The notes beneath the pieces were generated by a model. It was not told the origin of the DNA and did not search any database. It saw only the letters and a program-made list of their open reading frames with translations. A program made the position numbers and the translations under genes. A stretch of 64,000 nt of DNA, from contig NW_021832379.1 of NCBI RefSeq assembly GCF_006345805.1, positions 62,001 to 126,000 on the forward strand, read 5' to 3'. Each line of letters starts with the position of its first letter. The first letter of the stretch is position 1. The DNA is from Octopus sinensis. Its lineage: Eukaryota. Positions 18,613-59,455 of this stretch are shown here, one piece after another.

Positions 18613-19484
18613 GAAATAAAGGACATATGGACAAATCAAATTTATTATAACATCTGCACATGAATAGATTTCGCTTCATATTAGCATTAACCCTTGTTCT
18701 TGTTTATTTGTTGTTTTTTTTCATGGCTTAGCAGATATCTTGTCTGAGAATCAATCCTGTAGAGTGTTCTGTATTTGTACCTGATCATATAGAAACGAAT
18801 AATGTTAGGGATTCAACTAAAATGAATAACTGTTTTCTCTTTTTATATATTCCCAGTTAAATTTATGCTTTCAGTGCTTTATCCTCTTATTTCTAAAAGT
18901 ATCCCTAGAATAGGTTCTAGTGATGGGATCTTTTCGGTTTGAACGGCAGTTTTTAACATAATTTCTAGGTAACTAAAAAATTTTAAACTTCGTATACTGG
19001 TAGAATGTGTTTATAAAACATCTTTTTCTCTTGGCTTTCTTGAGAAAATTTTGTAGTTTGTAACATATTTCGTCTTTAATTTCTTGCATTTCGGCAATTT
19101 TAACCAATTACTGGTATCTAATGAGTTAAAAAGCATTCTGTGCCGTATGAATATGTCCCTCGTTTAAGAAACACATTGGGTTTATTTACAATTGTGAAGA
19201 AAAACAAATACCCTTCCCCCACCCCTAATCCTAACCCTAATTAACCCTAAATCTAAAACAGATTGAAATGCAATAGATCGATTCTAGGGTCATAATTATG
19301 GGTGACAATTTCGTATGACACCGCTAGAAAACGCGTAGGTATCTTTTTTTTTCTTCACAAATGTAAATAAACCCAATGTGTTTCTTAAATGAGGGACATA
19401 TTCATACGGCACAGAATGCTTTTTAACTCAATAGACGCCAGTGATTGGTTAAAATTGCCGAAATGCAAGAAATTAAAGGCGAAA

Positions 19485-20995: not shown

Positions 20996-21554
20996 TATGT
21001 TATAAACTACAGAATTTTCTCAAGAAAGCCAAGAGAAAATGATGTTTTATAAACACATTCTACCATTATACAAAGTTTAAAATATTTTTAGTTACCTAGA
21101 AATTATGTTAAAAACTGCCGTTCAAACCGAAAAGATCCTAGTGATGTACTGGAATCAATTCAATTGATTATAATGATGTAACATTTATGGTAACCAGGGC
21201 TAGTGTGTGAGTGTACGTATGCATAGAATTCAGTTGCTCCTACCACTCTTCTTACCTGAATATTAGCATTGAAAGAAGATCTCAGTCACTCTGGCTTGCA
21301 ATCTCTCTTGTAGCCATATTGATATCCTCAATGTTTGAGAAACACATTAAGAATGATCTCGTTTGAGATTACAACCATCTTTGGCTAGTTTGACCCTGAT
21401 TGGTTGGCATCTAGCACAGTCTGTCTCTCTACTTATTTCGTGCCAGAGTGTAAAGCGAACCAATCACGGCCTTCGGATAAGGCCTACCTAAGATGCCCGT
21501 CTTTGAGCCAGTTTAACTCCTTAAATAAGCCTGTTTTCACTATTCTTTGTCTTT

Positions 21555-24500
21555 CGACTTCAGCCCACACACGCGTCTACGGAGTATTGCTTCTTGTTTA
21601 ACCGCAAGGTTTGTTACTATTATTACTGTTGTTATCACGTTTGTTGGTTTCCCGTAAGGGAAGCGTTGTTGTATTGCATTTGGTTAAATATTGTAAACCG
21701 TAACCCTCCCCCTTTGAAGGAACTTTTTTGTGTAAAAATTGAACTGTGTCCCTGTTTGGGAAATTGCCATTTTTACGGAAAAAATTGTGTTAAAATGTCT
21801 TCAATGGAAGGAAACCAAAAAATGAATTTCGCTGCAGCCATTGGCGGTCGTAAACAAATAAGCATAAAAATAGAAGAAATCCAAACATGCTTCGGAATGA
21901 TAAGCGAAAGTAATGGCGTATCAAAAATAACACCACCCAACAAACTCAAAAACAAAATCAAAGAGAGAACCATAATATATAAAAGTTATAACGCAGAAAG
22001 TAACAGATTTGAACACCCGGAAGAGAGCACTATAGAGAGATGTCTTGGTGCGACATTAAAAGAAATAAAATATCTAACAAGAGGTAATAAATTCACCACA
22101 ATAGAAGCAAGGTTCGAGTCAACGGAACGTGCAAGAGAATATTCGACTCGAACCTTGCAAAGTTGCAATATTTTGTTGTTGCCCCTATATCTGGGGCGAA
22201 GGATGTCCCGAATTAAAATTTAAAATATCCCTCCTGTGATGGAGGTGGGATGGATTGTGGCCATGCTGTTGTATAAGAGAGAAGATAAAATTAGAATAAT
22301 TGAAATAACAAGAGACGGACCACAAAATTAGCGAGACGAGACCAGACCCTCGAGATCCTGGTCCAAGCTACCACAAATGACCTCGAAGAACTATCTGGGG
22401 TAATTGTCATGGATGATATAAATATCTCCATCAATGTAGAGGGCAGGAAGCCACGTTGTTATAAATGTGGAAAAAAAAGGCACATAAAAGAAAAGTGTCC
22501 AGAAAACAAAAAAGAAATGAACCAGCCCACCACTACCATCTCCAAGGAAGCCGACCCCCATGAGGGGAGCTTTATAACTAAAACAGGCAAAATCCTTTCA
22601 GAAAAGAGGTGTTACTTGTGGACAAGGAGGAGGCAAAACGAAAAACAAACTCAGCTAAAACCAAAGATGGTGCACTCCCAGCCACGGAGGCCATTACTAG
22701 GAGGGCACTCCCGGCCAAAGAGGCTATCAACGAGGGAGCAACCACCTCTCACCAGCCAACACACGAACAGATTACAGACCGTGAAGAAGAAACAAGTTTG
22801 CAGGATACAAACGAAGGGTTTCATACAGTCTCTAGGAAAAGAACTAAGAATGCAGATTCTCCAACAAAGACACTGGCCCCGAAAACAAAGGTACCAAAAC
22901 TGGAAAGAAAAAAAAAAGAAAAAAGGACAATCATTCATAGATATACCTATAGATATCCCCCAGAACAAAGACTCGGTGACAGTGGCATACAAAACTAAAA
23001 CATCTATCTAGATGGGGGTCATTAGACCCCATCGAGGTACATCGATATACTTTAACAATCATAAAACCAGCCCCATGACCATAGCAAAGATTCCTAAAAC
23101 TTTATTTTTTGACTTAACAAAACTACATCCTAACGATATCGGGGCACTAAAAGATTTTTAAAAAGTGTTTGACCCGCCGGATGAACCCACCCTGGAAGAA
23201 AAGGACGAAAGCCGGAAAATGGTCTCAAATATTTTGAGAACCATTCCCCTTGAAAGATAAAATAATACAAAGGAATGGTAAGTGTCTTTCCTTTTCCCGC
23301 ATAACGTAGGATGACCATGTTAAGGATCGCATGTTTGAATGTTCGTGGCCTGGACTTGAAGAGGAAGCAGGCTTGCCTCGTCGACAATCTCAGGTCACAC
23401 AGAATAGATGTGATGGTTGCTACAGAGACCAGGTTGGGCAAGCTGCAGGCCTTCTCGACCCTCCTGAACGACTACGAGAAAATAATTTCTTCTAGCCAGG
23501 AGGGAGGGAGTAGAGGCGTGGCAGTCTTGATCCAGAAAAGCCTGGCTCTGCAGACACGTACAATCTTCGCGGACCTGGAAGGCGAGTCAGTCGTTCTGGA
23601 TCTAACGTACAGTGGTGAGGCCTTCAGGTTGGTTGGCATCTACGCGCCTGGAAATGCAGAAAAACAAGTTGACTTCTTTCGACGCCTGGAGAACTTTCTG
23701 GTGACATCGAGGACAGTAGTTGTGTTAGGCGACTTTAACACTATACTGGATGCACGCTTGGATAGCGTTAGCTCGAAAGATAGAAAGGGTAACTCATGCC
23801 TCATCATGAAGCGATTCAGGCTGGCAGATCGATATAGACTTGATCATCCGAGTGTTCCAATGTGGACTTGGGCAAGAAACAATGGATTGATCAGGTCTTA
23901 TATAAACAGGATAGTGGTGAGTATTAGAGATAAGTCTAGTTTTACTTGTCCACAATTTACCTATGTACCCTACACGGATCACAAATTAGTGACATGTGGA
24001 GTGCATATAGATAAGGTACATAGACAGGGATCTGGTTATTGGAAGCTAAACAAGACACTATTGGATTGTGAGGCATGCTGTAGCAAGTTTAAGGTATTAG
24101 TTAAGAGGGCACTAACCAGCGCGGTGATTAACAACCGGTGGTGGAGTGCCCTCAAAAGAGCCTTTTGAATTGAGTCAATTAGATTTAGCAAGTAGTTAAG
24201 TCTAGAGCAGACTAGAGTAGAAAGGGATCTAGTTAAGACATTAGAAGAGGCACTGAGATCGGGCCCTGTATCACAAGTGTTGGCAGCGAGAGCGGCTTTG
24301 GACCGACAATTCAATGCCAAGCACGAGGGATGCAGAGTCTGGGCTAGGATACGTGCAATGGGCCGTGAAGGTATCAATGTTGCCAGATGGGCTCGCTCGG
24401 AAGAAACCCGACGTGGCATCGATGCTACGATTGGGTCTTTGGCAGATGAGTCCGGACAGGAGATCCAAGGACAAGAAGAGATATGCAAGGCCTTTCACAA

Positions 24501-24968
24501 GCACTTTGCCGCGTTGTTCAGGAGGAGCGGGACGTTGGACCATGAAGATGCCTTACGGCATATTCTGGCTGGCGGCCTGAGTCTTTCGGCCCATGATGCT
24601 GAGTGCTGCGAAGGACCAATCACGGCCAAGGAGGTCAGAGAGGTGTCCGAGTGCCCTGGGGACAAGTCGCCGGGTCTGGATGGTCTTCCTTACGAATTTT
24701 TTAGTAGCATGCCAGACTTGTTCAAGAACGTACTGGCCAGTATGTACACGAATTACCAGCAGAATGGGAGGATTCCCAAAGCTGTAAGCCGAAGAGTGGT
24801 GACACTGATCAGGAAGGACCCGAGCAAGGGGGATAACGTCGATAACTTTAGGCCCATAACTCTGTTAAACACAGAGTTAAAATCTGGCCAAGGTGCTTGC
24901 GAAGAGAGTTAGGGTTGTCGTGGGTGACCTGGTGGGAGAAGCACAGACATGTGCCATCCCAGGAAGGA
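21555..24968 (+). mobile_element. Tx1/L1-clade LINE with intact 5' end, broken off at the start of RT
   Basis: ORF1 (from about 21797) with CCHC knuckle CYKCGKKRHIKEKC; ORF2 from 23311 with APE endonuclease (LNVRGL, ETRL, GDFN, TDHKLV) and RT N-terminus (KSPGLDGLPYEFF, RPITLLNTELK, QTCAIPGRT); several stops and frameshifts. Confidence 0.88.
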
Positions 24969-27745
24969 CGGATTTGTGCAATTTGTATTCCTGTTCAGCA
25001 TTACGGCGTCCTTTCCTGGCAAGTCGGACTGCTGCAGTCTCCCAAATTGCACTATTTGGTGGTTTTTTGTGCTTGTGTGGTACTGATGCTGCACATGCCG
25101 CCCATATTGAATTCAGAATGTTCTGGAGTATAGTGTCCACATCTCCAGAGGCATAAAATTCGAGCCAGTTTGGGCGTTGCAGCTCAGTACAATAAGAGTT
25201 CCAGTCTGCTTTATTCCAGCCGAAGCAGGCAGTTTGAAGATGGTTGTGGTTTTTGTTATAACCAATCAGAGACAAGTCGGCCATGATCAGAGTCACCTAA
25301 AGGTTCTTCAGTAGTGACACTGATAATTGTTTCAGGAGAAGTGGTAAGTAGCAGATCCAAAGTGTTGTTACCCCTTGTGGGGGAGGTAATGACTTGGGAC
25401 CAATTTGAATTCAGCACCAGTTCAAGGAAATCGTCTGCACTTTGCGACCAACGGAAGGCCTCCCATTCAATCTCAGGGAAATTGAAGTCTCCTGCAATAT
25501 AAACATAAGTGGCTGTTTTCAAAGCAGCAGCTCTGAGGATATCAAAAAGTCGTGTGTCTTGATGATAATTGGGGGTGGGGGTGGGTAAACAACTCCAAGC
25601 AGAAGTGTTGACATGGTCATGTGTATATTGCAGAAAAATACTTCCTGCTGAGATTGGTTCAAATCATCACAAGGAATTGCCGATAGATTTGATCGAACAT
25701 AAACCATCACACCCCTTCCACAGAGATCAATGCGGTCTTTGCGGAACAGGTTGTAGCTGGATATGCTGAAAACCCCATACAGAGTGCAGAATGTGCCCAT
25801 GTTTCTGTGACTGTGATGAAATCTGGGTCGATACTTTTGACGTAAGAGTCAAAAAGATGTATCTTGTTGCATAAAGTACGGGCATTCAAGGACAGCAGTT
25901 TGTATTTGGATTTCAGATGGCGATGATATACAGGAGATGGCTGATTGTTCTTGGTTAGTTTCCCAAGATTTTTGTATTGCCAGTTGTTGTTGTGGGTGCA
26001 GTCTGGTCAGTCCAACTGGTATCCCTTATCCACGACTCACTAGACTTGATAAATTTCCATATTTGCCCATCACCGCGTAGGTTAAAGCTTTCCTGTGGCA
26101 CAGAGTTGCAATTTAGGAAAGCTACAGATCTTAGCTTTGGGCGTACATCAGGTGGTAGGCCAGGACATGTCCTTAGGTGATTCTGTTTTCGCGCCGAGCC
26201 CTATCAGCAGTCAGATGGTATGCCCGTGCCTCAGTAGAGTTTGAAAACATCAGCCTGATCAGTCGGGGTTTGGATCCTGGTCGGCCAAGGCGGAAAGCAC
26301 TTTTTGGAGGAACACAGCTGAGGTCCTTAGATGTGTTTCCAGTGAATGCCTGCAGATCAACCACATCTTCCGGCACTCCGATGGCAATTAACTCATGAGG
26401 TAATTGCCATTGGAGTCTAGTGAGTCGTGGATAAGGGATACCAGTTGGACTGACCAGACTGCACCCACAACAACAACTGGCAATACAAAAATCTTGGGAA
26501 ACTAACCAAGAACAATCAGCCATCTCCTGTATATCATCGCCATCTGAAATCCAAATACAAACTGCTGTCCTTGAATGCCCCGTACTTCTTCAACAGGAAT
26601 GGCTGATTTTTGTTGCTGTTGTTGAAGAGTGACAGGGGAGGAAGATACGGGCGGCGGCTTTAATTTTTGCTGTTGTTCTTCATCAACAGGACTGGTTTTG
26701 GGAGACAAAGTAGTCGGTTTTTGCTGTTCAGCAGCAATGGTAGCAGGGGACACACAAGTCAGGCACTGAAATGACCAGTTTGGTAGCTGGACCATTTCCC
26801 AGAGTTTATCCATCATAGAAGTATGGTGTCCTTTCTTTTGACCTGGGATCTTTTGAAAGTTTGTGGCACATTGAAAGCAGATTGAAACACGACATTTTCT
26901 GCATTCAACCTATCTATTTTGAAAGGAATTTTCGAGTTTTGTGCATAGATGACAGATGTGATTTGCCGGACAACATTCTATTTTAGGACAGCGACCAGTT
27001 TTGTCGCACGGCTCATCCACGGATGATACCGTGGCAGTTTTGTTATGTCTGCTCATCCGTACCGTAGTATAAGGTAAACAAAGTAAAAAAAAGTGAAGAT
27101 ATAGCACACTTGTTAGGGAGATAAATAAGATGTTTTTATTTTTTGTTGTTATTGTTTTCGCTTTCCTCATTGTATGTGTGTATACAAGATGCAATTATAT
27201 GTGTAATCAAGAGATGTAAGGAGTCAATGGTTGGTGTGTTTATAATGCGCGCACTTGGTAGGGCGATAAATAAATAATATCTTATTTTTTGTTGTTGTTG
27301 TTAACTGTTCCCACTTTCCTCATTGCATGTGTGTATACAAAAAGATACAATTATATGTACAATCAAGAGATGTAAGAATACAATGGTTGGTGAAGAAGAA
27401 AGTATGATTTAAATTCGGTTTGTGTATATATTTGTGTGTGGTGCGTGCTGGTATATAAAACTGTGTGTATGGATTTTCTAGAATTCGGGATGTACCTACA
27501 GTTATCTTCATGAAGTAGAATGGTGTGTTTTCAACTGTGGTTGCTACACATGGTAACACACAGATTTACGACAAGGAGACACACAGCTATTTTCATTTTG
27601 TAAAATCATTAAAGGTACTCTTCCATTAACCAAGGAATGTGTTGTGTACTTACTTATTAAGTTTTGTCAGAGGGTATTACAATTATCTTTACGAAGTAGA
27701 ATGGCGTGTTTTCGATCGTGGTTGCTACACACGGTAACACATAAC
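24969..27745 (-). mobile_element. CR1-clade LINE 5' half (5' UTR repeats, Cys-rich ORF1, APE domain), RT missing
   Basis: ORF1 from about 27056 with PHD-like CHLC...CRKC...CFQC...CLTC and AFRLGRPGSKPRLIRLMF; ORF2 LNARTLCNK...VTETW...AGDFNFPEIEW...PTRGNNTLDLLLT...SDH; duplicated upstream modules at 27100-27410 and 27497/27677. Confidence 0.82.
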
Positions 27746-30960: not shown

Positions 30961-31435
30961 TGTAAAATGCATTTTTGATATATTTTACTAGTAATGCAAC
31001 AGTAGTAAAATATATTATTGATAATATTTTACTAGTTATACTCAGTACTGGATTAACCATTGAGCATATGCTTAGGTCATCAAGGGAAGAGGGGAGGGAG
31101 CAGCACTAAAAAATGACTTTAAATTTGCTATAATAATATTCGGAGTGGTTTATGTGATCGGAAATATAATTTCGGTGTTCAAGGTGTCACGGTGAGGAAT
31201 TTATCAGGACTTTGCTATTAAAAAAAAAAAAAACACAGAAAACTTTACAAATATAAATAAAGTGAAAGTATACAAAAATAAACATCATTTTCCATCTAAC
31301 TGTTAGTTTTGTTTCATTTTGAATTAAATGTATTTGGGGTAACCAAAATGTTTTAAGAGCTTTTAGTCCGGCCCCACATCAACCAGGCTGTCTGCTTCCT
31401 CACTGATAGACATGTGGGAGTGTAAACTATGTCTA

Positions 31436-31655
31436 GTCACATGACCAAAACTGACCAATAGAAATGCAATACTTCAACTTCCGTTGTAGCTCTCACCACT
31501 TTCGTTTATGGAATTCGTCGTCATCGTTATTTATAAATAATTGCACAACTTATTACCCTATATTAATTAATTATTACCCTATATTAATTAATCTGTATGA
31601 ACACGACGGCACCTCACCAAGTTTCCATTCACCAAATTCCACTTCTCAGGTAAAT
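31436..31655 (+). promoter_or_regulatory. Putative promoter and non-coding exon 1 of ZNF gene 1
   Basis: E-box GTCACATGAC (31436-45), CCAAT (31455-59), ETS-like ACTTCCG (31477-83), locally CpG-rich, donor AG|GTAAAT at 31649/31650; motif-based inference. Confidence 0.5.
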
Positions 31656-33360
31656 ATTTCGCTTTTATGTCTTATCCATTACGTCGGCCGACCACTGTCA
31701 ACGAATTTCTCTGAAGTAGATTTTGGCAACATATTTATTGCTAACAATTGGTTTTGCAGTAATAAATTGCTTTCTGTTTTGGTACTACATGAGAACAGTG
31801 GTCCCGGTGCGCGCACTCGCGTCGTCGCGCTTCCACGCTAGCTAGTCGTGACTAGTCGATCCTACAACGACTAAATATATATATATAGTAAATAAATATA
31901 TATATAGCAAAGTAAATAAAACACAAAATAGATAATTTTGGATCTTTTCGGATTTGAACTGCAGTGTTTTTTCTAGCGGTGTCATATGAAATTGTCACCC
32001 ATAATTATGACCCTAGTATCGATCTATTGCATTTCAATCTCTGTTAGGGTTAAGGGTGGGGGGAAGGGTATCTTTTTTTTCTTCACAAATGTAAATAACC
32101 AACCCGGTAAAATTACAGATTAACACCCGCACGATTTTCACTAAGAAAAAAAAAAAAAAAACTCGGATTTTTTGCGTGGAATCAAGTACCCTGACCGCAA
32201 AAACAAAAAACGAATTTTTTAGATACCTTTCTGCTTTTTAAGACAATAAAGTGTTATTGGAGGGAAATCTGGCTGCTATTTCTAGCTGCCTTAATGACAA
32301 CATAGCGATTTACAGATAAATGAATTAATTACTATTTTACAGAATAAAATTAATGAATTAATTATATAAATTAAATAATTCTTGAAAATTAATTAATATT
32401 AATAATATTTTTTGAACAAAGTAAATAATTTATAAAACTTAAATAATAATTTTTTTTACACAAACGCGAACGTATATAATTTGTGAAACTTTTTTTTTTT
32501 TACAGACGTATATAATTTGGTAAACTTAATGAATTAATTTCTTCACATCATCATCATCGTTTAACGTCCGTTCTCCATGGACGGTTCAACCGGGGATCTG
32601 GGAAGCCAGAAGGCTGCACCAGACTCCAGTCTTATCTGGCAATGTTTCTACAGCTGGATGCCCTTCCTAACGCCAACCACTCCGAGAGTGTAGTGGGTGG
32701 TTTTTACATGCCACCCGCACAGGTGCCAGGCGAGGCTGGCAACGGCCACGGTCGGATTGGTGCCAGTCGAGGCGGCTCTGGCATCGGCCACGATTCGGAT
32801 AGTGCTTTTTACGTACCACCAGTCAAGGGGTCCTGGCATCTGCTGGGTGCCACACTTGCCCCAACATGTCTTTGCAAGCAAAGGGGGTTGGCATGGGTGC
32901 CTGTCGTTGGATGAGGTTCGATATCAACTTCGCTTGCCTCAACAGGTCTTTGTGTATAAATGTATAAATTTTTCGCACTAAATTCTTTCCGTAGAATTTA
33001 TCAAAAAACGCGCAAAATTATTCCGTAGAATTTATCAAATTAAAAAACGCAAAATTAATATATTTTTTGAAATTGCAAATTATTTAGAATATAAAACAAA
33101 TGAAGTTAAATTTTTAAAATAAATGTCATATACTTATACTCTGTAAGGTGCTGTGTTCACACTTCAATTTACTATTTTCTAGAAATGTTGCTTTTCTAAT
33201 TGAAACCATTTTTCTCAAGCTCCATTTAAAAGTCCATCATGTCTCTTGAACCAATTAATGTTTCTGATCTCTCTCTCTGCCCCCCTCTCTATCTCAAACT
33301 AATTTTGTGTAGATGGAGGTGTGGGTGGGAGACAGATGAACGATGTCTCATTCTCTGATA

Positions 33361-33426
<66 letters not shown>

Positions 33427-33432
33427 TATATA

Positions 33433-34279
33433 CTAGCAGAATTGCCCGGCGTTGCTCGGGGCTGAATTGCTTGAAAGTACTGTTAATGATTGCACTGAAT
33501 TATGATGATTATTCAGGCAAATATTGATATAAGTTTACGGTGGGAGATAAGGACTTAACGATCAAACGTGTTCCATTGCATTGTTTTGGGGGAACCAAAT
33601 TTCTGATGATCATTATAGGAGCACCAACTTTAAGTTTGAGAAAGTGTGGTGGTAGTCCGGGATGCTCAAAGGAATTGAGTACCTCTATTGGATAGTTGAT
33701 GACGTCCTCTGGGTCAGGAGTTGTATCGATAGACTGATATACATAGACTTCCCCAGGAATGAGTTTTAGCATTTCATCATTAATATGGTGAACAGTTTTA
33801 TTCCTCGGGGCCAGTATAGCCTTTTTGCCAATCCAATCCATATTCTGATAATTAGCTTGTAGATCTGGGAACACTGCATCTCTGAGATCAGAAGGCGTCT
33901 TAACAATGGTACAAATGGAATCGATGGCAATATTACCATTTTCATCCCCTGGTATTTTGCCTTCACCAAGTGCAAGGAGGGTGTGAGGAAATGCTGCTGA
34001 TGTGATATTACGTTGCATATGAGCACGCATATTGGTGTGAAGTTTGAGAGTTACTTCCCTTTATTAAAAAAAATATGCATTAAAATGGAAAAAAATGATG
34101 GTAAATTATTTGTAAAATCATAGACTCATCGTAGACGCGCGCTAATACCCAGAAGGGCTCAATATGAATCACGACTATAAGATACCCGGTTTTGGTTAAA
34201 CTGCATTGCAAAATGTGGGAGTAGTTAGGAATCTAAATCGGAGTAGACAGACACACAACCTTTCTTTTATATATAAATA
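33433..34279 (-). mobile_element. Helitron derivative carrying a PIF1-like helicase fragment (33509-34060)
   Basis: Minus-strand 3' hairpin (cccgagcaacgccgggc) plus CTAG; helicase peptide KAILAPRNKTVHHINDEML...LNSFEHPGLPPHFLKLKVGAPIMIIRNLVPPKQCNGTRLIVKSL. Confidence 0.88.
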
Positions 34280-34281
34280 TT

Positions 34282-34950
34282 TTCGTCCTAAAAAACTTTG
34301 TATGGATTGAATGGTTACCTCTATGGAAATATATACACGCACATTATACATACATGTGTGTATAGATGAATATATAAATACATTTAAATATCTATATACA
34401 CTTTTGGGCGATCTTTGTGCTACTTAGAGATAACTTTAGATCTTATTTTCGTCCTAAAAAACTTTGTGCAGAGTGAATGGTTACCTCTATGGAAATATAT
34501 ACACACACATTATACATACATCTGTGTATAGATGAATATATAAATACATTTAAATATCTATATACACTTTTGGGCGATCTTTCTGCTACTTGTATATACT
34601 TTAGATCTTATATTCGTCCTAAAAAACTTTGTATGGAGTGAAAGGTTACCTCTATGGAAATATATACACACACATTATACATATATCTGTGTATAGATGA
34701 ATATATAAATACATTTAAATATATATATACACTTTTGGGCGATCTTTCTGCTACTTGGATATAGGTCTTATATTCGTCCTAAAAAACTTTGTATGGAGTG
34801 AAAGGTTACCTCTATGGAAATATATACACACACATTATACATACATCTGTGTATAGATGAATATATAAATACATTTAAATATCTATATACACTTTCGGGC
34901 GATCTTTCTGCTACTTGGATATAGGTCTTATATTCGTCCTAAAAAACTTT
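34282..34950. repeat. 160-166-bp tandem array (4 copies plus a partial)
   Basis: Units begin TTCGTCCTAAAAAACTTT at 34282, 34448, 34613, 34773 and 34933. Confidence 0.92.
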
Positions 34951-35385
34951 CCTGTCACACAGTCACGCACACACACCCTCACACACACACACACGCACAC
35001 ACACTCACACATACACGTTAGCTTACAATTTTATTTATATATTTGCGTGTCTATGTGTGTAAAGTGGAAGTGGGAATGTAGAGTGAAATAGTCACTCACT
35101 ACAGAAAGTGAATTAGTTTCACTTTATTCGTTGCACACTGTGTGTGTGTGCGTTTGCGTGTGCTGTATCCCACACTAAGAGAAGCATTTGACTCATACAC
35201 CACAATGTGAGTTTTCTCTAAATTTTGCTTAATTGGGGTTGAAATTTTAAAAAGTGGACCTGTCACGACCCGATGCATTCTACTCTTAAAAATGCTAGGT
35301 AAATTGTAATTGAAGAAATCCTATATTGTAGATTTCTATAAGATACAAAGGGAGGCAGATAAAATCTGCCTTTTATAATAAGAGA
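34951..35385 (-). mobile_element. Helitron-type 5' terminal segment
   Basis: Minus-strand 5' TCTCTTATTATAAAA next to the hairpin GGCAGAT-AAA-ATCTGCC (35354-70); (CA)n/(GT)n microsatellites. Confidence 0.65.
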
Positions 35386-35390
35386 TATAT

Positions 35391-36385
35391 CGTGGCCCCT
35401 ACCTGGGACGTAGTCGGTCCACCTGTGCATACCTTCAATCTTGTGACACTTGTGAAGACCTGCTGAGGCAAGTGAAAATTAAAACAAATCAAAATAGATG
35501 AACATCAATGGAATTTGTATCTTTGTGGTACCAGTGCCGGTGGCACACAAGAAAACCATCCGAACGTGGCCGTAGCCAGTACCGCATCGACTGGCCTCCG
35601 TGCTGTGGGCACATGACAAACACCATCCGATCGTGGCCGTTCGCCAGCCTCATATGGCACCTCCGCATCGACTGGTCTCCGTGCTGTGGGCATATGACAA
35701 ACACCATCCGATCGTGGCCGTTCGCCAGCCTCATATGGCACCTGTGTTGGTGGCACATAAAAACACCATCCGAAGACCTGGCAAGACTAGTCAGGTCATA
35801 ACCCGTGGCCCCTACCTGGGACGTGGTCAGTCCACCTGTGTATACCTTCCTTCTTGTGACACTTGTGAAGACCTGTTGAGGCAAGTGAAAATCAAAATCA
35901 AAATAGATGAACATCAATGGAATTTGTATCTTTGTGGTACCAGTGCCGGTGGCACACAAGAAAACCATCCGAACGTGGCCGTAGCCAGTACCGCATCGAC
36001 TGGCCTCCGTGCTGTGGGCACGTAACAAACACCATCCGATCGTGGCCGTTCGCCAGCCTCATCTGGCACCTGTGTCGGTGGCACATAAAAACACCATCCG
36101 AGCGTGGCCGTCTGCCAGCCTCTTCTGGCACCTGTGTCGGTGGCACATAAAAAACACCATCCGAGTGTGGCCGTTCGCCAGCCTCGTCTGGCACCTGTGT
36201 AGGTGGCACATAAAATCACCCACTACACTCTCGGAGTGGTTGGCGTTAGGAAGGGCATCCAGCTGTAGAAACACTGCCAGATCTGACTGGCCTGGTGCAG
36301 CCTTCGGGCTCCCCAGACCCCAGTTGAACCGTCCAACCCATGCTAGCATGGAAAGCGGACGTTAAATGATGATGATGATGATGAT
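35391..36385 (+). mobile_element. RTE 3' UTR with a ~410-bp internal direct duplication and ~55-bp modules
   Basis: 35391-35773 is repeated from about 35804; ends in the core motif and a (GAT)n tail. Confidence 0.85.
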
Positions 36386-38629
36386 ATATATAATGAACCA
36401 TTTCTTAAACCTACACGATATAGTCTATAAATTTGGGATGTTTTTGAAAGATAATATATTTTGTCATCAGAATATATATACTTTCTCACACTACAATTAA
36501 GATATATTTATTTTAAATCGTTCATCTTTTCCCGCCACAACAAAAATTGGGCACGAAAATTTTTCTAAATATCAGCGGAATGAACAACTGAGATAAAGAG
36601 GGGGGCAAAGAGAGATCAGAAAAAAAAATTAGAACCTCACACCACCACCACCACCACCGCCGCCACGTAATTCAAAGTTGTTCATTTTGATATGGCTCAA
36701 GAGACATGGACTTTTAAATGGAGCTTGAGAAAAATGGTTTCAATTAGAAAAGCAACATTTCTAGAAAATAGTAAATTGAAGTGTGAACACAGCACCTTAC
36801 AGAGTATAAGTATATGACATTTATTTTAAAAATTTAACTTCATTTGTTTTATATTCTAAATAATTTGCAATTTCAAAAAATATATTAATTTTGTGTTTTT
36901 TAATTTGATAAATTCTACGGAATAATTTTGCGCGTTTTTTGATAAATTCTACGGAAAGAATTTAGTGCGAAAAATTTATACATTTATACACAAAGACCTG
37001 TTGAAGCAAGCGAAGTTGATATCGAACCTCATCCGACGACAGGCACCCATGCCAACCCCCTTTGCTTGCGAAGACATGTTGGGGCAAGTGTGGCACCCGG
37101 CAGATGCCAGGACCCCTTGACTGGTGGTATGTAAAAAGCACTATCCAAATCGTGGCCGATGCCAGAGCCGCCTCGACTGGCACCAATCTGACCGTGGCCG
37201 TTGCCAGCCTCGCCTGGCACCTGTGCGGGTGGCATGTAAAAACCACCCACTACACTCTCGGAGTGGTTGGCGTTAGGAAGGGCATCCAGCTGTAGAAACA
37301 TTGCCAGATAAGACTGGAGTCTGGTGCAGCCTTCTGGCTTCCCAGATCCCCGGTCGAACCGTCCATGGAGAACGGACGTTAAACGATGATGATGATGTGA
37401 AGAAATTAATTCATTAAGTTTACCAAATTATATACGTCTGTAAAAAAAAAAAAGTTTCACAAATTATATACGTTCGCGTTTGTGTAAAAAAAATTATTAT
37501 TTAAGTTTTATAAATTATTTACTTTGTTCAAAAAATATTATTAATATTAATTAATTTTCAAGAATTATTTAATTTATATAATTAATTCATTAATTTTATT
37601 CTGTAAAATAGTAATTAATTCATTTATCTGTAAATCGCTATGTTGTCATTAAGGCAGCTAGAAATAGCAGCCAGATTTCCCTCCAATAACACTTTATTGT
37701 CTTAAAAAGCAGAAAGGTATCTAAAAAATCCGTTTTTTTTTTTGTTTTTGCGGTCAGGTTACTTGATTCCACGCAAAAAATCTGATTTTTTTTTCCATGT
37801 GAAAATTCCGGGGGGGGGGGTATTGTTACTCCCCCCCACCTTTCCGGACCAAAATATGGGATTTGCAGCATATTAGGAGGTCAGGGTACTTGATTCCACG
37901 CAAAAAATTTGAGTTTTTTTTTTTTTTATTATTGAAAAGCGTGCGGGTGTTAATCTGTAATTTTACCATAAACCCAATCTCTTTCTTAAACAAGGAACAT
38001 ATTCGTATGGCACAGAATGTTTTCACCTCAATAGATGCCATTGATTGGATGAAATTGCCGAAATGCAAGAAATTAAAGAACAAATATCTTACAAACTATA
38101 GAATTTTCTCAATAAAGCCAAGAGAAAAAGATATTTTATAAACACATTCTACCAGTATACGAAGTTTAAAAGTGTTTAGTTACGTGGAAATTATTTTAAA
38201 AAGCTGCCGTTCAAACCGAAAAGATCCATAATTTTTTACACAAAGTAAATAAAACACAAAGTAAAGATCGACTAGTCACGACTAGCTAACGCGAGTGCGC
38301 GCACGGGGATCACTGTTCACTAGTAGTAACTTCTGTTTCACATTGAAAATGAAATTTTACCGAAGAAGCAGTAATGGTTAATGTTTACATTATTATAATT
38401 TCCGAAGGATTTGAATGCAAGATTCATTCAAAACATCAAAAACAATTGAAAGGATAAAAAAATCCATCTTCGAAGAGATTGGAATTATAAAATTTACTTT
38501 ATTTTCATGTGCAGCATTCAATAGACTTTAATTAATGTTTCTTTTGGGTTTTCTAATGTATCAGAAAATGTTAAACCGAAACAAAACCGACGAAATAACT
38601 TGCATATATTTATATGATCCTACTAGAAC

Positions 38630-40130
38630 ATAATAATAAATAATGAAATTATTGTATGCAATGCTCAGTGCGTATAAAGCATATACAGTAATGTACAAAT
38701 GTCTGGGAAGTGAACAGTGTATAACTCAGATACATGCTTGTGTGTGTATGGAGGGGAGAAAATCAGGTGTAGTGAAGGCGAATCTCAGGAAGCATGGAAG
38801 TTTTGAAGGATGCAGTGTTCCGACAACTAACAACTGATGCCGGCAGTTTGTTCCATGCATCAGCGTGTGTATGGAGGGGAGAAAATCAGGTGTAGTGAAG
38901 GCGAATCTCAGGAAGCATGGAAGTTTTGAAGGATGCAGTGCTCCGACAACTAACAACTGATGCCGGCAGTTTGTTCCATGCATCAGCGTGTGTATGGAGG
39001 GGAGAAAATCAGGTGTAGTGAAGGCGAATCTCAGGAAGCATGGAAGTTTTGAAGGATGCAGTGCTCCGACATCTAACAACTGATGCCGGCAGTTTGTTCC
39101 ATGCTTCAGCAACTCTCAGCGTGAACAAGTGTTTCCTAAAGGCATGGGAGCTGTGCTGTTTTCTGACTTTGTAAATATGTCCACGGGTGTTAGACGGGTG
39201 GAGTTTGAAAAGTTGCTCAGAGTTATTGTTTGTAAGATGGTTTATACTTTTATGGTGTCTGCCAAGTCAGCTGCCAGACGGCGGAGTTTCAATGTGTCCA
39301 TGCCCAGGGAAGTAAGGCATTCAGAATATGGCAAATGCCTGATGGTGGGTATTCTCTTGGTTGCACGTCGCTGAACAGCTTCCAGATGATTAATATCCTG
39401 GGCGAGATTGGGGTTCCAGACCGGTGATGCAAATTCCAGGTGAGGTTGCACCATAGCTATATAAAGCCGCAGATAGGTAGCCGGAGAGCGGCTCACAAAG
39501 GACTTGGTGAGTGATGCCAAGACACCCTCAGCCTTCTTGGCAATTTTAGCAATGTGTTTTGTCCAACACAAATCACTGTCGACAATAACACCCAGGTCAC
39601 GTTCACAAGAAGACTTTTTGAAATTAGTGTTGTGGAAGGAGTAAGTAGACGCTGGGTTTTCCTCCCAAAATGCATGGTGGTACATTTGTCCACAGCCAGC
39701 TTGAGTTGCCAGTGCATGATCCACTGCTGGATTGTGTCCTGTTCTGATTGCAATGAAGATCCATAGTGTGTAGGATCTGACCTCTTTATTTCAAGGTACA
39801 GCTTGATGTCATCTGCATATTTCAGCACTGTGGCATTCTTTAAGTTGGCATCTATGTCATTAACATATGCAACAAATAAAAGGGGGCCAAGAACAGATCC
39901 CTGTGGTACACCAGATGTCATCTCATAGGGTGATGAGTGTTGTCCTAGAACTGTGACAACCTCTTTTCGGCCGATAATAAAGGACTTCAACCAGTTATAG
40001 AGTTCGTCTCTTACGCCCAACGCAGAAAGTTTCACCATAAGTCTTTTGTGTGGCACAGAATTAAAAGCCTTAGCAAAGTCCAGGTAAACAACATCCACCC
40101 AGTATCAGTGATTCGGGTTCCTGTGAAATA
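38630..40130 (-). mobile_element. 5'-truncated CR1 LINE (RT C-terminal half) with a triplicated 3' end
   Basis: DVVYLDFAKAFNSVPH...GVPQGSVLGPLLF...KYADDIKL...LEAVQRRATK; 123-bp x3 repeat at 38742-39110; (ATT)n tail. Confidence 0.9.
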
Positions 40131-40832
40131 ACCATATTTTAGTCGTGACCAACTTGTCAATAGTTTTAGATAGTCATCCTATATTGTTTAATAAAATGAA
40201 ATACTTTTTATATAGATTAAATATGTTACACGATATATTGATTGGAGATCCACAGTTAGGAATGGCTTCAAGTTATTTCTTATTGCAACACTTATAACAA
40301 AACAGAAACTAAAGTTGTAGTCTATAAAGTATGTAGATGTCATTTTGTTGTGAGGTTTAATTTTAACAACATTTAAAAGGTAAAATTTAATTGTCCACAT
40401 AAATGTTTTATATTTACACTTTATCCTGATGGAATGTAGTAAAATATTGAATCTCTTTTTAAATACCACTTACATCTTATAATGTCTCTATTATTTCAGC
40501 GAATCTAATGCAAATGGCATACTTGAAGTACATCATGAGTTTTTATAAAGTTTTAAAGACTAAAAGAAGATGTCACACAGAATAAATATCACGTTGCGTA
40601 TATAAATCTACGGTAGAATTCTAAAATATTTCCTCTGGATGTCATTGGGAAAATTTCTCTCCCTTACTGTCTGAAACATATACAAGACAATTTTGTATAT
40701 GTGGTTATTTACAAGTTTGAAGATCTTTGGATATTGAGAAGAAATTATAGTTGATGGAAATATTGCAGTGGATATATTTGTTAAAAATATTGGGAAAACA
40801 TATCTGTATATTGTGATGAGAGAATAAAAATT

Positions 40833-42263
40833 ATGGAAAATAAATTATGTGAAATCCAGTGTAAAACAGTTGATTTTCCTGATGGAATACTGAAAGAAAT
40901 TGGAAAAACATACCCCTGTGATATATGCAAGAAGTCATTCACTCAAAAAGGTCACCTAACTACTCATAAACGTATTCATACTGGAGAGAAGCCATATCAT
41001 TGTGATATCTGTGGTAAATCATTCTCTCGAAATGGTGATGTAACTATACACAAACGTATTCATACAGGAGAAAAACCATATCACTGTGATATTTGTGATA
41101 AATCGTTTTCTCAAAGTGGTAAATTGACTATACACAAACAGATTCATACAGGAGAGAAACCTTATCACTGTGATATTTGTGGTAAATCATTTGCTCAAAG
41201 AAATGGCTTGACTGGCCACAAACAAATTCATTCAGGAGAGAAGCCATATTGCTGCGATATTTGTGGTAAATCGTTCTCTCGGAATGATCACTTAACTGTA
41301 CACAAACTCATTCATACAGGAGAGAAACCTTTCCACTGTGATATTTGTGGTAAATCATTCTCTCGAAATGAGCACTTAACAGATCACAAATACACTCATA
41401 CAGGAGAGAAACCATATCACTGTGATATTTGTGGAAAATCATTCTATCGAAATTATCATTTAACTAAACACAAGCACATTCATACTGGAGAGAAGTCCTG
41501 TCGCTGTGAAATCTGTGGTAAAGCATTCTTTCGAAATGGTGACTTAACTACTCATATACGCATTCATACAGGTGAGAAGCCATATTCTTGTGATATCTGT
41601 GGTAAGTCATTCTCTGGAAATGGTGACTTAACTATTCACACACGCATTCATACAGGGGACAAACCATATTCTTGTGATATCTGCAGTAAATCATTCTCTC
41701 GAAATCATGACTTAACAACTCACAAACGTGTTCACACAGGAGAAAAGCCGTATTGCTGTGATATTTGTGGTAAATCTTTCTCTGAGGGAAGTGTCTTAAC
41801 TACTCACAAACGCATTCATACAGGAGAAAAGCCATATCACTGTGATATATGTGATAAATCATTCTCTCAAAGATCTACTTTAACAAGCCACATACAGATT
41901 CATACAGGGGAGAAGCCACATCACTGTGATATCTGTGGTAAATCATTTTCCCGAAATGGTGATTTAACTACTCATATACGCATACATACAGGAGATAAAC
42001 CATATTCTTGTGATATCTGTGGTAAATCATTCTCTCGAAATCATGACTTAACTGCTCACAAACGCATTCACACAGGAGAGAAACCATATTGCTGTGATAT
42101 CTGTGGTAAATCTTTTTCTCAAAGATCTAACTTAACTAACCACATACATATTCACACAGGAGAGAAACCATATCACTGTGATATCTGTGGTGTATCATTC
42201 TCTCGAAATGGCGATTTAACTAAACACAAACTCATTCATACAAAGGGAAATCCTTATAACTGA
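40833..42263 (+). CDS. C2H2 zinc-finger protein, 476 aa, 16 tandem fingers, no recognisable effector domain
   Basis: Uninterrupted ORF of CxxC-x12-HxxxH units with TGEKP linkers; acceptor TTATTTCAG at 40499 upstream. Confidence 0.95.
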
Positions 42264-49769: not shown

Positions 49770-51420
49770 TATAGTTAGTTAGTTAGTTAGTTAATTTTTT
49801 GGCTCAAAAAGCAAAAAGCAAGGCCATGTAGGGGGACATGGAGTTAAGTACAGGGTGGTGTTCATATAAAGAGTTCAGGCCACTTGAGGTCAAGGGAGAC
49901 TTTGAACAAAGCGGTCGTCGGCATCTTCACCATCTCGTCCGGCAGCTTGTTCCACGGATCCGCAACCCGGACAGAAAGCTCCTCTCCTTCGATTGAGATG
50001 AAATCGTCGCAGGTAGAGCTTTTCGGAATGACCCTGCAGCCAACGCTCTGGAGCAGGAGTGAAGAACAGCTCTTTCGAGAGGTTACACTTTCCGCTTATG
50101 ATGTTGTGAGCAAGAATGAGATCACCATGGCGGCGGCGTTTTTCTAGAGAATAAAGGTCGAGCGTCCTCAGCCTTTCTTCATAGGACAAATTTTTGAGAC
50201 CATGAACGATGCGGGTAGCCAGCTTCTGGACTCTTTCGAGATGCTGTATGTCTTTGAGGAGATAAGGAGAAGAGGCTTGAATCCCGTACTCCAATATGGG
50301 TCTCACCAGCGTGACATAGAGTGGTAGGAATATGGCTGCTGTGAGCATTCCGAATGACCGTCGAATCAAGAACTGAATTCCGCGTGATTTGTTAGCAGCA
50401 TGGATGCACTGGGCCGAAGGCGAAAAGGAGGAATCCACCAAGATACCCAGGTCCTTTACCTGATCGGTCATCTCCAGCAGCAGACGACCTGGCTCGAAAT
50501 CAAGTTGAGTTGCAGGAGGAGAGCCAACAGGCAGATGACAGCACTTTGACACGTTCAGACACAGGTCCCATTCGTTAGACCACCTCCAAATTTGGTGGAG
50601 GCATCGATGAAGATCCTCTATATCACCGTGAGGAGCGACCAGTTTGACATCATCGGCAAATAGAAGGGTGTGTTGTGTGAGGTCGTCGGGCAAGTCATTT
50701 ATGAAGACTAAGAACAATAAGGGCCCAAGCACTGAACCTTGAGGCATGCCACTGCTCGCACTGGAGACGTCGGACCACGAACCATTAACTTGGACTTGGA
50801 AGGAGTGATCTGAGAGGAAGGCACCAACCCATCATACAATATCCGGATGGAAACTATATGCTTGAAGCTTGACAAGTAATAGGCGGTGGTTAACCGAGTC
50901 AAAAGCTTTGGCAAAGTCCAATAAAACGATGTCAACAGCATCACTATCATCGAGGATGCGCGTCACCAATTCTTCCATTACCAGTAAGTTGGTCAAGCAT
51001 GATCTCTTCGGCACGAAGCCGTGTTGGGAATCAGAGATAGAGGCTGTGTTTTGGAGGTGGAGCATCATACTTTTCTTAAGGATGGTTTCGAACATCTTGC
51101 TGATTATTGATGTAAGGGAAGCCGGTCGATAGTTAAGCGGGTCTTTGCGGCTCCCTTTCTTGAAAATTGGGCAGATTATCGCTGTTCTCCAGTCCGCAGG
51201 TATAACACCCGTCGCCAATGACATATTTTAAGAGAAGTGTTAAAGGTTCGCAGATGACCTGAGCCAACGCTTTGATAACCTGTGGGTGTATGCCATCAGG
51301 GCCGTGACCCTTGTTGACATCGAGGCCTTGAATAACACGTTTGACTTCGTCCCGCGTGATGACCAATCGAAGCATTGGAGGTACCGATCTATCAAATGGA
51401 GGGGGTTCATGACCATCATC
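49770..51420 (-). mobile_element. 5'-truncated CR1 LINE (RT domain) with (TAAC)n tail
   Basis: GPDGIHP...WRTAIICPIFKKG...NYRPASLTS...QHGF...DFAKAFDSV...PQGSVLGPLLFLVFINDL...FADDVKL; frameshifted. Confidence 0.9.
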
Positions 51421-59030: not shown

Positions 59031-59455
59031 AAATGTTCATTGTTATATTTACATTTTATGTATCGTCTACATCTTATATTGTTTCTCTCTGTTATTTCAG
59101 AATATCAGATGGTATTGGCTAAAAAGAAAATGTTTACATCAGATGCATCATCAACTTTTTATCATCTTTTAAAGACTTAAGGAAAATATACAGAAATTAT
59201 ATAACCCTGTTTGTATAAATCTGATAGAATTACTGTCTGGAATCTGTTTAAGATGATCTTTTCATTCTCCTTCAACCTGGACAAATTTACAAAAGAGGTT
59301 GCAGCTTCTTCAGACATTGACAAAGAGCTCAGTTGATGAGAAGATAACAGTAAAAATATTTCTTATGAGTCAAATATACAAAAAAAGACAAGAAATATTT
59401 ATATATATATATATACATATATATATTGTGGTGGAAGAAAATAAACTTATAGAAA

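What the first reader, a model, noticed from the sequence alone, without database searches (positions are those of the whole stretch)
32160..37790. 1.1-kb near-identical inverted arms, each holding the same RTE fragment, in a ZNF intron: candidate dsRNA/TE-silencing hairpin
Seen: both arms share the RTE 3' UTR insertion and its private deletion (ccatg^gacgg), so they derive from one copy. Most differences are transitions at CpG sites, which fits real divergence in the genome better than an assembly echo. The inversion extends into the host TIR, and weaker similarity continues inward to about 33295/36590, suggesting fold-back duplication or arm-to-arm conversion. Inference: if 31650-40499 is intron 1, each ZNF pre-mRNA forms a ~1.1-kb duplex. 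That could be an ADAR hyper-editing substrate (coleoids edit extensively) or a source of hairpin siRNAs against the most abundant local LINE, coupling a ZNF gene to an RNA-based TE trap.
Basis: partly seen in the sequence, partly recalled or inferred. Interest (0 to 1): 0.75.

Follow-up and report, generated by a model that had tools for sequence, protein, structure and literature searches.

The report
Fold-back transposon carcass upstream of ZNF exon
The 1.1-kb near-identical inverted arms are real, but they are the two ends of one 5.9-kb non-autonomous DNA transposon nested inside two smaller transposons; it could form a long RNA hairpin if transcribed, as many repeat pairs in animal genomes can, and nothing here shows a special function.

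Summary
Observation confirmed. Arms 32153-33253 and 36693-37794 align in inverted orientation over about 1.1 kb (98% with gaps). The 1,057-bp core has 11 substitutions, all transitions, 8 at CpG, 4 lost per arm. Both arms carry the same retroposon 3'-tail fragment with a shared 13-nt deletion that six other copies in the window lack.

New: the arms are not a free-standing duplication. They lie inside a discrete 5,862-bp insertion (32106-37967). It has identical 28-nt termini and an 8-bp target-site duplication (ATAAACCC). Two other copies of the host MITE in the window show the empty site. That MITE has its own 8-bp duplication and sits inside a third element, so the outward patches of inverted similarity are nested terminal repeats.

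The spacer holds only junk: a Helitron helicase fragment, tandem repeats and a third retroposon copy. No transposase was found. Identity drops at both arm edges, which fits an older inverted repeat homogenised recently.

The splice acceptor at 40499 is conserved in the paralogous ZNF gene, but the proposed exon 1 has no support, so "intronic" is plausible and unproven. The dsRNA, editing and siRNA roles are untestable here and would be ordinary. Copy number elsewhere could not be tested. Interest is low.

The parts
32153..33253 (+). Left near-identical arm (core of the inverted repeat)
   Evidence: 98-99% identical to the reverse complement of 36693-37794.
36693..37794 (-). Right near-identical arm
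32106..37967 (.). Element 'I': a 5,862-bp non-autonomous fold-back-like class II insertion that contains both arms and the spacer
   Evidence: The termini are 28/28 identical in inverted orientation and occur nowhere else in the window. Its flanks are contiguous in two other copies of the host MITE, which gives the empty site.
32106..32196 (+). Left terminal inverted repeat (T) of element I, continuous with the left arm
   Evidence: 84 matches, 5 mismatches and 2 gap columns against the reverse complement of 37879-37967.
37879..37967 (-). Right terminal inverted repeat (T') of element I
37795..37878 (-). 84-nt segment found only on the right side, between T' and the right arm. Its inner part, together with 37752-37794, is a second and more diverged T-like copy (T'').
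32095..32105 (+). Left target-site duplication of element I (ATAA[CCA]ACCC, with a 3-nt insertion)
   Evidence: the empty site in the paralogous MITE copies reads TGTAAATAAACCCAATG. Also.
37968..37975 (+). Right target-site duplication of element I (ATAAACCC)
32546..32950 (-). Retroposon 3'-tail fragment in the left arm. The (ATG)n tail is on the minus strand, and the fragment carries the private 13-nt deletion.
   Evidence: A link to a LINE 3' end is suggested. The RTE clade was not tested.
36993..37397 (+). The same retroposon fragment in the right arm, with the same 13-nt deletion
33254..33296 (+). Inner edge of the left arm, with weaker similarity to 36589-36630
36589..36692 (-). Inner edge of the right arm: a weaker-similarity block (36589-36630) plus a 62-nt segment present only on the right (36631-36692)
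33512..34060 (-). Internal fragment of a Helitron-type Pif1 helicase (motif IV to the 2B domain), truncated on both sides
   Evidence: PF21530, E = 1e-14.; the best named relatives are cephalopod PIF1-like proteins at 51-71% identity.
34278..34950 (.). Tandem repeat of about 160 bp, 4 copies, in the spacer. (TA)n lies at 33358-33432 and a CA-rich run at 34955-35016.
35868..36380 (+). Third, independent copy of the same retroposon family in the spacer. It is about 84% identical to the arm copy, keeps the 13 nt, and has an expanded 63-81-bp internal tandem.
31940..32094 (.). Left half of host MITE 'M'. TIR GGATCTTTTCGGATTTGAACTGCAG; target-site duplication ATAATTTT at 31932-31939.
   Evidence: Other M copies lie at 18926-19331, 19338-19478 and 20996-21138.
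37976..38227 (.). Right half of host MITE 'M'. Target-site duplication ATAATTTT at 38228-38235.
31780..31931 (.). Left half of the outermost element 'P'. TIR ...TACTAC..GAACAGTG.TCCC.GTGCGCGCACTCGCGT; candidate target-site duplication TTCTGTTT at 31772-31779.
   Evidence: An 8-bp match with +-4 nt slack is expected by chance 0.2% of the time.
38236..38330 (.). Right half of the outermost element 'P'. Candidate target-site duplication TTCTGTTT at 38331-38338.
40500..42263 (+). ZNF exon: untranslated leader plus a 476-aa C2H2 array (ATG at 40833). The acceptor ...TTATTTCAG ends at 40499.
   Evidence: The acceptor block is conserved with the second ZNF gene.

Best explanation
The arms are the two long inverted ends of a single dead, non-autonomous class II (cut-and-paste type) transposon. 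This fold-back-like element, 'I', spans 32106-37967.

Shown:
- Element I inserted, with an 8-bp target-site duplication, into the middle of a roughly 430-bp MITE. That MITE has its own 8-bp duplication and lies inside a third small TIR element.
- Before or after that insertion, one end of the element became represented on both sides. This end already carried a 5'-truncated retroposon tail with a 13-nt deletion.

Inferred:
- The 1.06-kb core is 99% identical, but both edges are clearly more diverged. The most likely history is an older inverted repeat whose central tract was recently homogenised, either by arm-to-arm gene conversion or by re-copying during double-strand-break or gap repair with a strand switch.
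- Since then each arm has decayed independently by methyl-CpG deamination.
- At the DNA level the structure is a passive carcass. It can still recombine arm to arm, either converting sequence or flipping the 3.4-kb spacer.
- If the region is transcribed through, which is plausible because a conserved splice acceptor lies 2.5 kb downstream, the RNA would fold into a duplex of about 1.16 kb. That duplex would be an incidental ADAR substrate like other nearby inverted repeat pairs. It is not a dedicated silencing device.
For: - Arms, identity and mutation spectrum.
- Shared 13-nt deletion against six other copies.
- Discrete insertion: termini 28/28 identical and unique in the window. The flanks 31969-32098 and 37968-38227 are contiguous in two other MITE copies (19331->18926 and 19338->19478), with the junction at TGTAAATAAACCCAATG, giving the duplication ATAAACCC.
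- Nested elements: perfect duplication ATAATTTT around M and TTCTGTTT around P.
- No transposase: Pfam finds only a Pif1 2B fragment in the spacer.
- Identity heterogeneity: 6 mismatches in 84 bases at the edges against 11 in 1057 in the core, Fisher p = 0.0009. The outer T'' copy is more diverged still.
- Folding: cofold gives -2096 kcal/mol, 1164 inter-arm pairs and helices up to 374 bp.
- Acceptor conserved with the paralogous ZNF gene.
- Nearby inverted repeats are the conventional source of ADAR substrates across Metazoa, octopus included: PMC9989829, PMC5625713.
- hAT, MITE, Helitron, LINE and SINE families are abundant in Octopus: PMC13282606.
Against: - No second copy of element I could be found, either in the window or in any reachable collection. 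Mobility as a family therefore rests on the target-site duplication and empty site alone.
- The left copy of the duplication carries a 3-nt insertion.
- The termini (GGTAAAATTAC...) do not match the usual hAT consensus, so the superfamily is open.
- The edge-versus-core difference rests on short, partly low-complexity edges.
- Transcription of the region is not shown.
- The right end has an unexplained doubled terminus (T' - 84 nt - T'').
Confidence: 0.7

Rival explanations
1. Functional hairpin-RNA locus. The ZNF pre-mRNA intron folds into a 1.1-kb duplex that has been retained because it yields endo-siRNAs or piRNA triggers against the retroposon family, or because it acts as an ADAR sink.
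For: The predicted duplex is very stable. About 37% of each arm is retroposon tail, present in both orientations. The 57-nt conserved core shares exact 21-mers with up to 5 other copies in the window. The high arm identity could reflect conversion.
Against: There is no evidence of transcription, and the proposed exon 1 is unsupported. Outside the 57-nt core the arms are only 75-89% identical to other copies, so few siRNAs would match. About 63% of the arm is AT-rich transposon sequence with no target. The structure is fully explained as a transposon insertion. Arm differences show neutral CpG decay.
Confidence: 0.04
2. In-situ inverted duplication after insertion. Element I originally had only the 90-nt terminal repeats. 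A replication or repair fold-back at this locus later copied about 1.1 kb of its left end to the right side. The arms would then be unique to this locus.
For: The right side has an extra T-like copy (T'') internal to the true terminus T'. This looks like a copied left end placed inside the original right end. The core is much more identical (99%) than T versus T' (92%). No other copy is seen in the window.
Against: A single recent copying event predicts uniform identity and sharp borders. Instead, both edges of the copied tract are significantly more diverged, and weak homology continues inward past a 62-nt indel.
Confidence: 0.2
3. Assembly artefact: an inverted false duplication, or a haplotig placed in inverted orientation.
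For: Arm divergence of about 1% is in the range of heterozygosity, and polymorphisms would also be rich in CpG transitions. Reads cannot be inspected here.
Against: The window has no gaps or Ns. The arms are separated by 3.4 kb of unique sequence and have different, structured borders (T/T'/T'', a 62-nt inner indel, decaying homology at both edges). The whole structure sits symmetrically inside two nested elements, each with matching target-site duplications. An artefact would not reproduce that.
Confidence: 0.03
4. Two independent insertions, in opposite orientation, of a 1.2-kb multicopy composite element.
For: Inverted pairs of TE copies are common; several weaker pairs occur in this window.
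Against: Neither arm has its own pair of termini or its own target-site duplication. A single duplication flanks the whole 5.86-kb unit. There is no T-like sequence at the inner arm ends.
Confidence: 0.03

Closest known systems
Fold-back / long-TIR class II elements (Drosophila FB; Galileo of the P superfamily, with TIRs up to about 1.2 kb). Cited from general knowledge, not tested against their sequences.
   Same: The element is bounded by a target-site duplication and has no transposase. The inverted arms exceed 1 kb and make up about 44% of the element. The central spacer is unrelated junk. Arm homogeneity suggests exchange between the arms.
   Different: The duplication is 8 bp (FB 9 bp, Galileo 7 bp). 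The arms are not built of tandem sub-repeats. They contain a captured retroposon fragment. The right end has a doubled terminus. The family's copy number is unknown.
hAT-type non-autonomous elements and MITEs
   Same: The target-site duplication is 8 bp for element I and for both host elements. Insertions are nested in AT-rich targets. hAT and MITE families are reported as abundant and recently active in Octopus vulgaris (PMC13282606).
   Different: The termini (GGTAAAATTACAG...) do not show the usual YARNG start. No hAT transposase or dimerisation-domain remnant was found.
Intramolecular dsRNA from nearby inverted repeats as ADAR hyper-editing substrates (inverted Alu pairs in humans; repeat-derived dsRNA across Metazoa, including octopus)
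   Same: Two inverted TE-derived copies lie within a few kb on what may be one transcript. The predicted near-perfect duplex is far longer than the roughly 50-bp criterion used in surveys (PMC9989829; PMC5625713).
   Different: Transcription is not shown here. The arms are 3.4 kb apart, beyond the +-2-kb window used in the PMC9989829 screen. The duplex is unusually long and perfect compared with typical repeat pairs.
Hairpin-RNA (hpRNA) endo-siRNA loci of Drosophila and inverted-repeat siRNA sources in mouse oocytes. Cited from general knowledge.
   Same: A long inverted repeat with a loop that could be processed by Dicer.
   Different: No small-RNA evidence. No defined target with extended perfect complementarity; only a 57-nt conserved core is shared. 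The origin is evidently a transposon insertion.
Arm-to-arm gene conversion in large genomic palindromes (for example on the human Y chromosome). Cited from general knowledge.
   Same: A near-identical core with lower identity toward the boundaries, and independent point decay in both arms.
   Different: The scale is 1 kb rather than tens to thousands of kb, and there are no genes in the arms.

Membership tests
Class II (TIR) transposon insertion | Target-site duplication flanking the element, with an empty site available for comparison | tested here: met
   ATAAACCC occurs on both sides (the left copy has a 3-nt insertion). Two paralogous MITE copies show the uninterrupted target TGTAAATAAACCCAATG.
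Class II (TIR) transposon insertion | Terminal inverted repeats | tested here: met
   The termini are 28/28 identical, with 92% identity over 90 nt. None are expected by chance.
Class II (TIR) transposon insertion | Multiple copies in the genome (a family) | not testable with these tools
   There is no other copy in the 64-kb window. The source genome is not in any reachable collection.
Fold-back / long-TIR element | Inverted arms forming a large part of the element, with no transposase | tested here: met
   The arms are 1.19 kb and 1.38 kb of 5.86 kb. Pfam finds only a Pif1 fragment in the spacer.
Fold-back / long-TIR element | Arms composed of tandem sub-repeats (classical FB) | tested here: not met
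   TRF finds no array spanning the arms. There are only short two-copy direct repeats and the retroposon's own 63-bp units.
hAT superfamily | 8-bp target-site duplication | tested here: met
hAT superfamily | hAT-type terminal consensus and transposase relationship | tested here: inconclusive
   The termini start GGTAAAATTAC, which is not the usual YARNG. No transposase remnant is available to classify. An 8-bp duplication is also produced by other superfamilies.
   Many copies share the (CAT)n-side terminus. One diverged copy sits about 370 nt 3' of an RT ORF, consistent with a LINE 3' tail or a partner SINE. Clade assignment needs a TE reference library, which is not available here.
ADAR substrate formed by an intragenic inverted repeat | Long, near-perfect intramolecular duplex | tested here: met
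   1164 inter-arm pairs, helices up to 374 bp, -2096 kcal/mol.
ADAR substrate formed by an intragenic inverted repeat | Both arms lie on one transcript, with A-to-G clusters in the RNA | not testable with these tools
   The acceptor at 40499 is conserved with the paralog, but the upstream exon is not located. No RNA data are available.
hpRNA / endo-siRNA locus | Arm-derived small RNAs of about 21-22 nt, with targets | not testable with these tools
   Indirect only: exact 21-mers shared with other retroposon copies are confined to 32643-32699.

The most novel reading that the evidence does not exclude
The hairpin is transcribed within the ZNF pre-mRNA and is processed into small RNAs. Through the 57-nt conserved core of the LINE-tail/SINE family, these repress that family in trans. 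The near-identity of the arms would then be maintained by conversion under selection. This would be a cephalopod hpRNA-type TE trap hosted by a ZNF gene.
Probability: 0.04. Interest if true: 0.6.

Novelty: new member of a known kind. Interest (0 to 1): 0.22.

Why it matters
The main value is as a worked example. An eye-catching 1.1-kb hairpin resolves into three nested 8-bp-duplication transposon insertions, and in-window empty sites prove the innermost one.

For cephalopod genomics it gives one well-delimited fold-back element with a captured retroposon tail, arm homogenisation, and a strong methyl-CpG decay signature (about 11% of CpGs lost per arm against about 0.15% of other sites). That signature would be consistent with germline methylation of this region.

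If the locus is transcribed it would be a clean natural substrate for measuring ADAR hyper-editing on a long perfect duplex. Such substrates are already known to be common, so this would not change current understanding.

Tried and rejected
- **Homolog search with the 476-aa ZNF ORF, meant to fetch the orthologous locus.** It was swamped by generic vertebrate ZNFs and returned no close relative.
- **Exact-sequence look-ups.** The Pif1 ORF, the ZNF ORF and two arm ORFs are not on record. An independent assembly of the locus could not be obtained.
- **Homolog search with the Pif1 fragment.** The best hits are 51-71% identical (Octopus bimaculoides, Acanthosepion) and none is near-identical. This supports a cephalopod source. 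It also shows that neither this locus nor a young family of this fragment is in the collection. I therefore did not spend the last homolog search on an arm ORF.
- **Exact scan of JGI metagenome contigs with the 28-nt terminus.** No matches.
- **Rfam at a permissive threshold over 31000-40800.** Only sub-threshold low-complexity 'miRNA' matches on the (TA)n and tandem repeats. Rejected.
- **Search for a paralogous exon 1 upstream of the second ZNF gene.** Nothing but repeats.
- **Helitron as the identity of the whole unit.** Rejected. The helicase piece is a 183-aa internal fragment truncated on both sides, and the unit has TIRs and a target-site duplication, which Helitrons lack.
- **Initial idea that 31783-38328 is one 6.5-kb element with 1.5-kb diverged arms.** Replaced by the nested P > M > I model once the empty sites were found.

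Full report

Yes. The repeat finder reports arms 32200-33237 / 36706-37743 at 1038 nt and 99% complementarity, with 3.47 kb between them. BLAST extends this to 32153-33253 / 37794-36693, 98.0% over 1106 columns.

In the 1,057-bp core (32197-33253) there are 11 substitutions. All are transitions. Eight are CpG<->TpG/CpA changes, four decayed in each arm, with 33 CpGs left per arm. There are also 8 gap columns in an A-run and a CAT repeat.

That spectrum is what methyl-CpG deamination produces in two real paralogous copies. It is not what an assembly echo would give.

All six other copies of the same retroposon in the window retain these bases. The arms therefore descend from one copy.

It is a 43-nt block (37 matches, 4 mismatches) lying beyond a 62-nt segment present only on the right.

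**2. What the arms belong to**

Inverted similarity also continues outward in co-linear patches: 32106-32196 / 37967-37879, about 31929-31970 / 38238-38198, and 31783-31822 / 38328-38289. I first read this as one 6.5-kb element with decayed long arms. Self-comparison of the window showed otherwise.

The sequences immediately left of 32099 and right of 37967 are contiguous in two other places. These are 19331->18926 on the minus strand and 19338->19478 on the plus strand, at 87-92% identity, with a partial third copy at 20996-21138. They are copies of a roughly 430-bp MITE, called 'M' here. Their uninterrupted sequence reads ...CACAAATGTAAATAAACCCAATGTG....

In the window locus the same sequence is split:
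- left side: ...TGTAA-ATAA[CCA]ACCC|GGTAAAATTACAG...
- right side: ...CTGTAATTTTACC|ATAAACCC-AATC...

So 32106-37967 (5,862 bp, element 'I') is a discrete insertion. It has an 8-bp target-site duplication, ATAAACCC; the left copy has since gained 3 nt. Its termini are identical for 28/28 nt, with none expected by chance and no other copy in the window.

M itself has 24-nt TIRs and a perfect 8-bp duplication, ATAATTTT (31932-31939 / 38228-38235). M in turn sits inside a third small TIR element 'P' (31780-38330), which is flanked by TTCTGTTT. An 8-bp match with that much positional slack occurs in 0.2% of random trials.

**3. Content of element I**

- **Arms.** The left arm (T terminus plus arm) runs 32106-33296. 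The right arm runs 36589-37967.
- **Retroposon fragment.** About 37% of each arm (32546-32950 and 36993-37397) is a 5'-truncated retroposon tail ending in (CAT)n/(ATG)n. It has a 57-nt core that is almost invariant among otherwise 75-89% identical copies.
- **Rest of the arm.** It is AT-rich with short two-copy direct repeats.
- **Is the fragment RTE?** One diverged copy of the tail lies about 370 nt downstream of a reverse-transcriptase ORF on the same strand (49890-50747; RVT_1). A LINE 3'-tail origin is therefore plausible, and so is a partner SINE. The RTE clade was not tested.
- **Spacer (33297-36588).** It holds (TA)n; a 183-aa internal fragment of a Helitron-type Pif1 helicase (PF21530, E = 1e-14; cephalopod relatives at 51-71%); a 160-bp tandem repeat x4; and a third, independent copy of the retroposon that keeps the 13 nt.
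- **Transposase.** None of the other stop-to-stop pieces submitted to Pfam gave a significant match (one marginal hit at E = 0.05), and there is no transposase. Element I is non-autonomous.

**4. How the arms arose**

Identity is not uniform. The core has 11 mismatches in 1057. The unambiguous edges have 6 in 84 (Fisher p = 0.0009). The outermost part of the right arm is a still more diverged copy of the terminus, T''. It is separated by a partly unique 84-nt segment from the perfect terminus T', which abuts the target-site duplication. T versus T' is 92% identical and includes transversions, unlike the core.

A single recent copying event would give uniform identity with sharp ends. A high-identity tract embedded in older, decaying homology is the expected footprint of two things: arm-to-arm gene conversion, or re-copying of the central tract during break repair.

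I therefore favour an older fold-back element whose centre, including the retroposon fragment, was homogenised recently. On the clock used for Octopus vulgaris TEs (JC 0.09 is roughly 25 My; PMC13282606), about 0.5% per arm would be of the order of 1-1.5 My. This assumes a similar rate in the source species, which is only known to be a cephalopod.

Whether homogenisation happened before or after insertion at this site cannot be decided without other genomic copies.

**5. Gene context**

The 476-aa ORF at 40833-42263 is a 16-finger C2H2 array. A second array lies at 59456-60838.

The two genes are paralogous from about 40 nt upstream of the proposed acceptor onward. The block ACATCTTATA.TG..TCTCT.TTATTTCAG| is conserved. 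This supports a real acceptor at 40499 and hence an upstream exon.

'Intronic' is plausible but unproven. If the upstream exon lies between 37968 and 40499, the hairpin is outside the transcript.

**6. Function**

If both arms are on one RNA, they are predicted to form about 1,164 inter-arm pairs with uninterrupted helices up to 374 bp, at -2096 kcal/mol. Several of the transition differences would become G-U pairs.

Such intramolecular duplexes from nearby inverted repeats are the conventional and dominant ADAR substrates across Metazoa, octopus included (PMC9989829; PMC5625713). Editing here would be expected and unremarkable.

For the siRNA 'TE trap' idea, only 32643-32699 shares exact 21-mers with other copies in the window, up to 5 of them. 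The rest of the duplex has no target. Nothing in the DNA indicates selection for the structure; the arm differences look neutral.

I conclude that this is a transposon carcass, with at most incidental dsRNA formation.

**7. Alternatives**

- **Assembly artefact.** Unlikely. There are no Ns. The arms are separated by unique spacer and have structured, asymmetric borders. The whole structure has perfect symmetry inside two nested elements with matching duplications.
- **Two independent insertions.** Excluded by the single target-site duplication and the absence of termini at the inner arm ends.
- **In-situ duplication after insertion.** This remains a live variant (about 0.2).

**8. Limits**

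The source genome and its relatives could not be reached. Four exact look-ups, two homolog searches and a metagenome scan failed. As a result, copy number, orthologous empty sites, read support, transcription, editing and small RNAs are all untested.

**Verdict**

The functional interpretation is speculative and, even if true in its modest form (an ADAR substrate), ordinary.

Noticed in passing
window 18926-19478 and 20996-21138: Two copies of the roughly 430-bp MITE 'M' lie head-to-head (minus copy 19331->18926, plus copy 19338->19478), and a partial third copy lies at 20996-21138. They served as empty sites for element I. The head-to-head pair is itself a small inverted structure.
   Followed up: partly
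window 25874-26046 / 26414-26587: A second near-perfect inverted repeat: 174 bp, 99.4% identical, 368-bp spacer. It lies inside a degraded LINE region and may be a small fold-back or MITE insertion.
   Followed up: no
window 31772-38338: Three class II elements are nested one inside the centre of the next (P > M > I). Each has an 8-bp target-site duplication. This suggests a preference of this kind of element for AT-rich or palindromic MITE centres.
   Followed up: partly
window 32643-32699 and copies at about 4130, 6150, 12900, 28520, 36250, 45960: A roughly 57-nt core (TTTCTACAGCTGGATGCCCTTCCTAACGCCAACCACTCCGAGAGTGTAGTGGGTG) is almost invariant among retroposon copies that are otherwise only 75-89% identical. 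This resembles a conserved SINE/LINE 'core domain'.
   Followed up: partly
window 7473-11182 (-): Ty3/gypsy-like LTR-retrotransposon pol: a 913-aa ORF with RT, RNase H and an integrase zinc domain, plus a 351-aa integrase-core ORF.
   Followed up: no
window 21525-24909 (+): A LINE with a CCHC-knuckle ORF1-like region, an APE domain (23305-24165) and the start of RT. It is degraded after about 24909. It has an ORF1, so it is probably not the RTE-type partner of the arm fragment.
   Followed up: no
window 38742-39110 and 39242-40098 (-): A 123-bp tandem repeat x3 (98% identical) lies next to a LINE RT fragment, between the nested transposons and the ZNF acceptor.
   Followed up: no
window 40305-40408 vs 56593-56698; 40457-40950 vs 59054-59564: The two ZNF genes are paralogs whose similarity includes the acceptor region and a short upstream intronic block. 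In the second gene that block lies 2.4 kb further from the acceptor, implying later insertions there.
   Followed up: partly
whole window vs arms: CpG observed/expected is 0.49 for the window but about 1.0 in the arms. The arms have lost about 11% of their CpGs each, against about 0.15% change at other sites. This suggests strong germline CpG methylation acting on a young sequence.
   Followed up: partly
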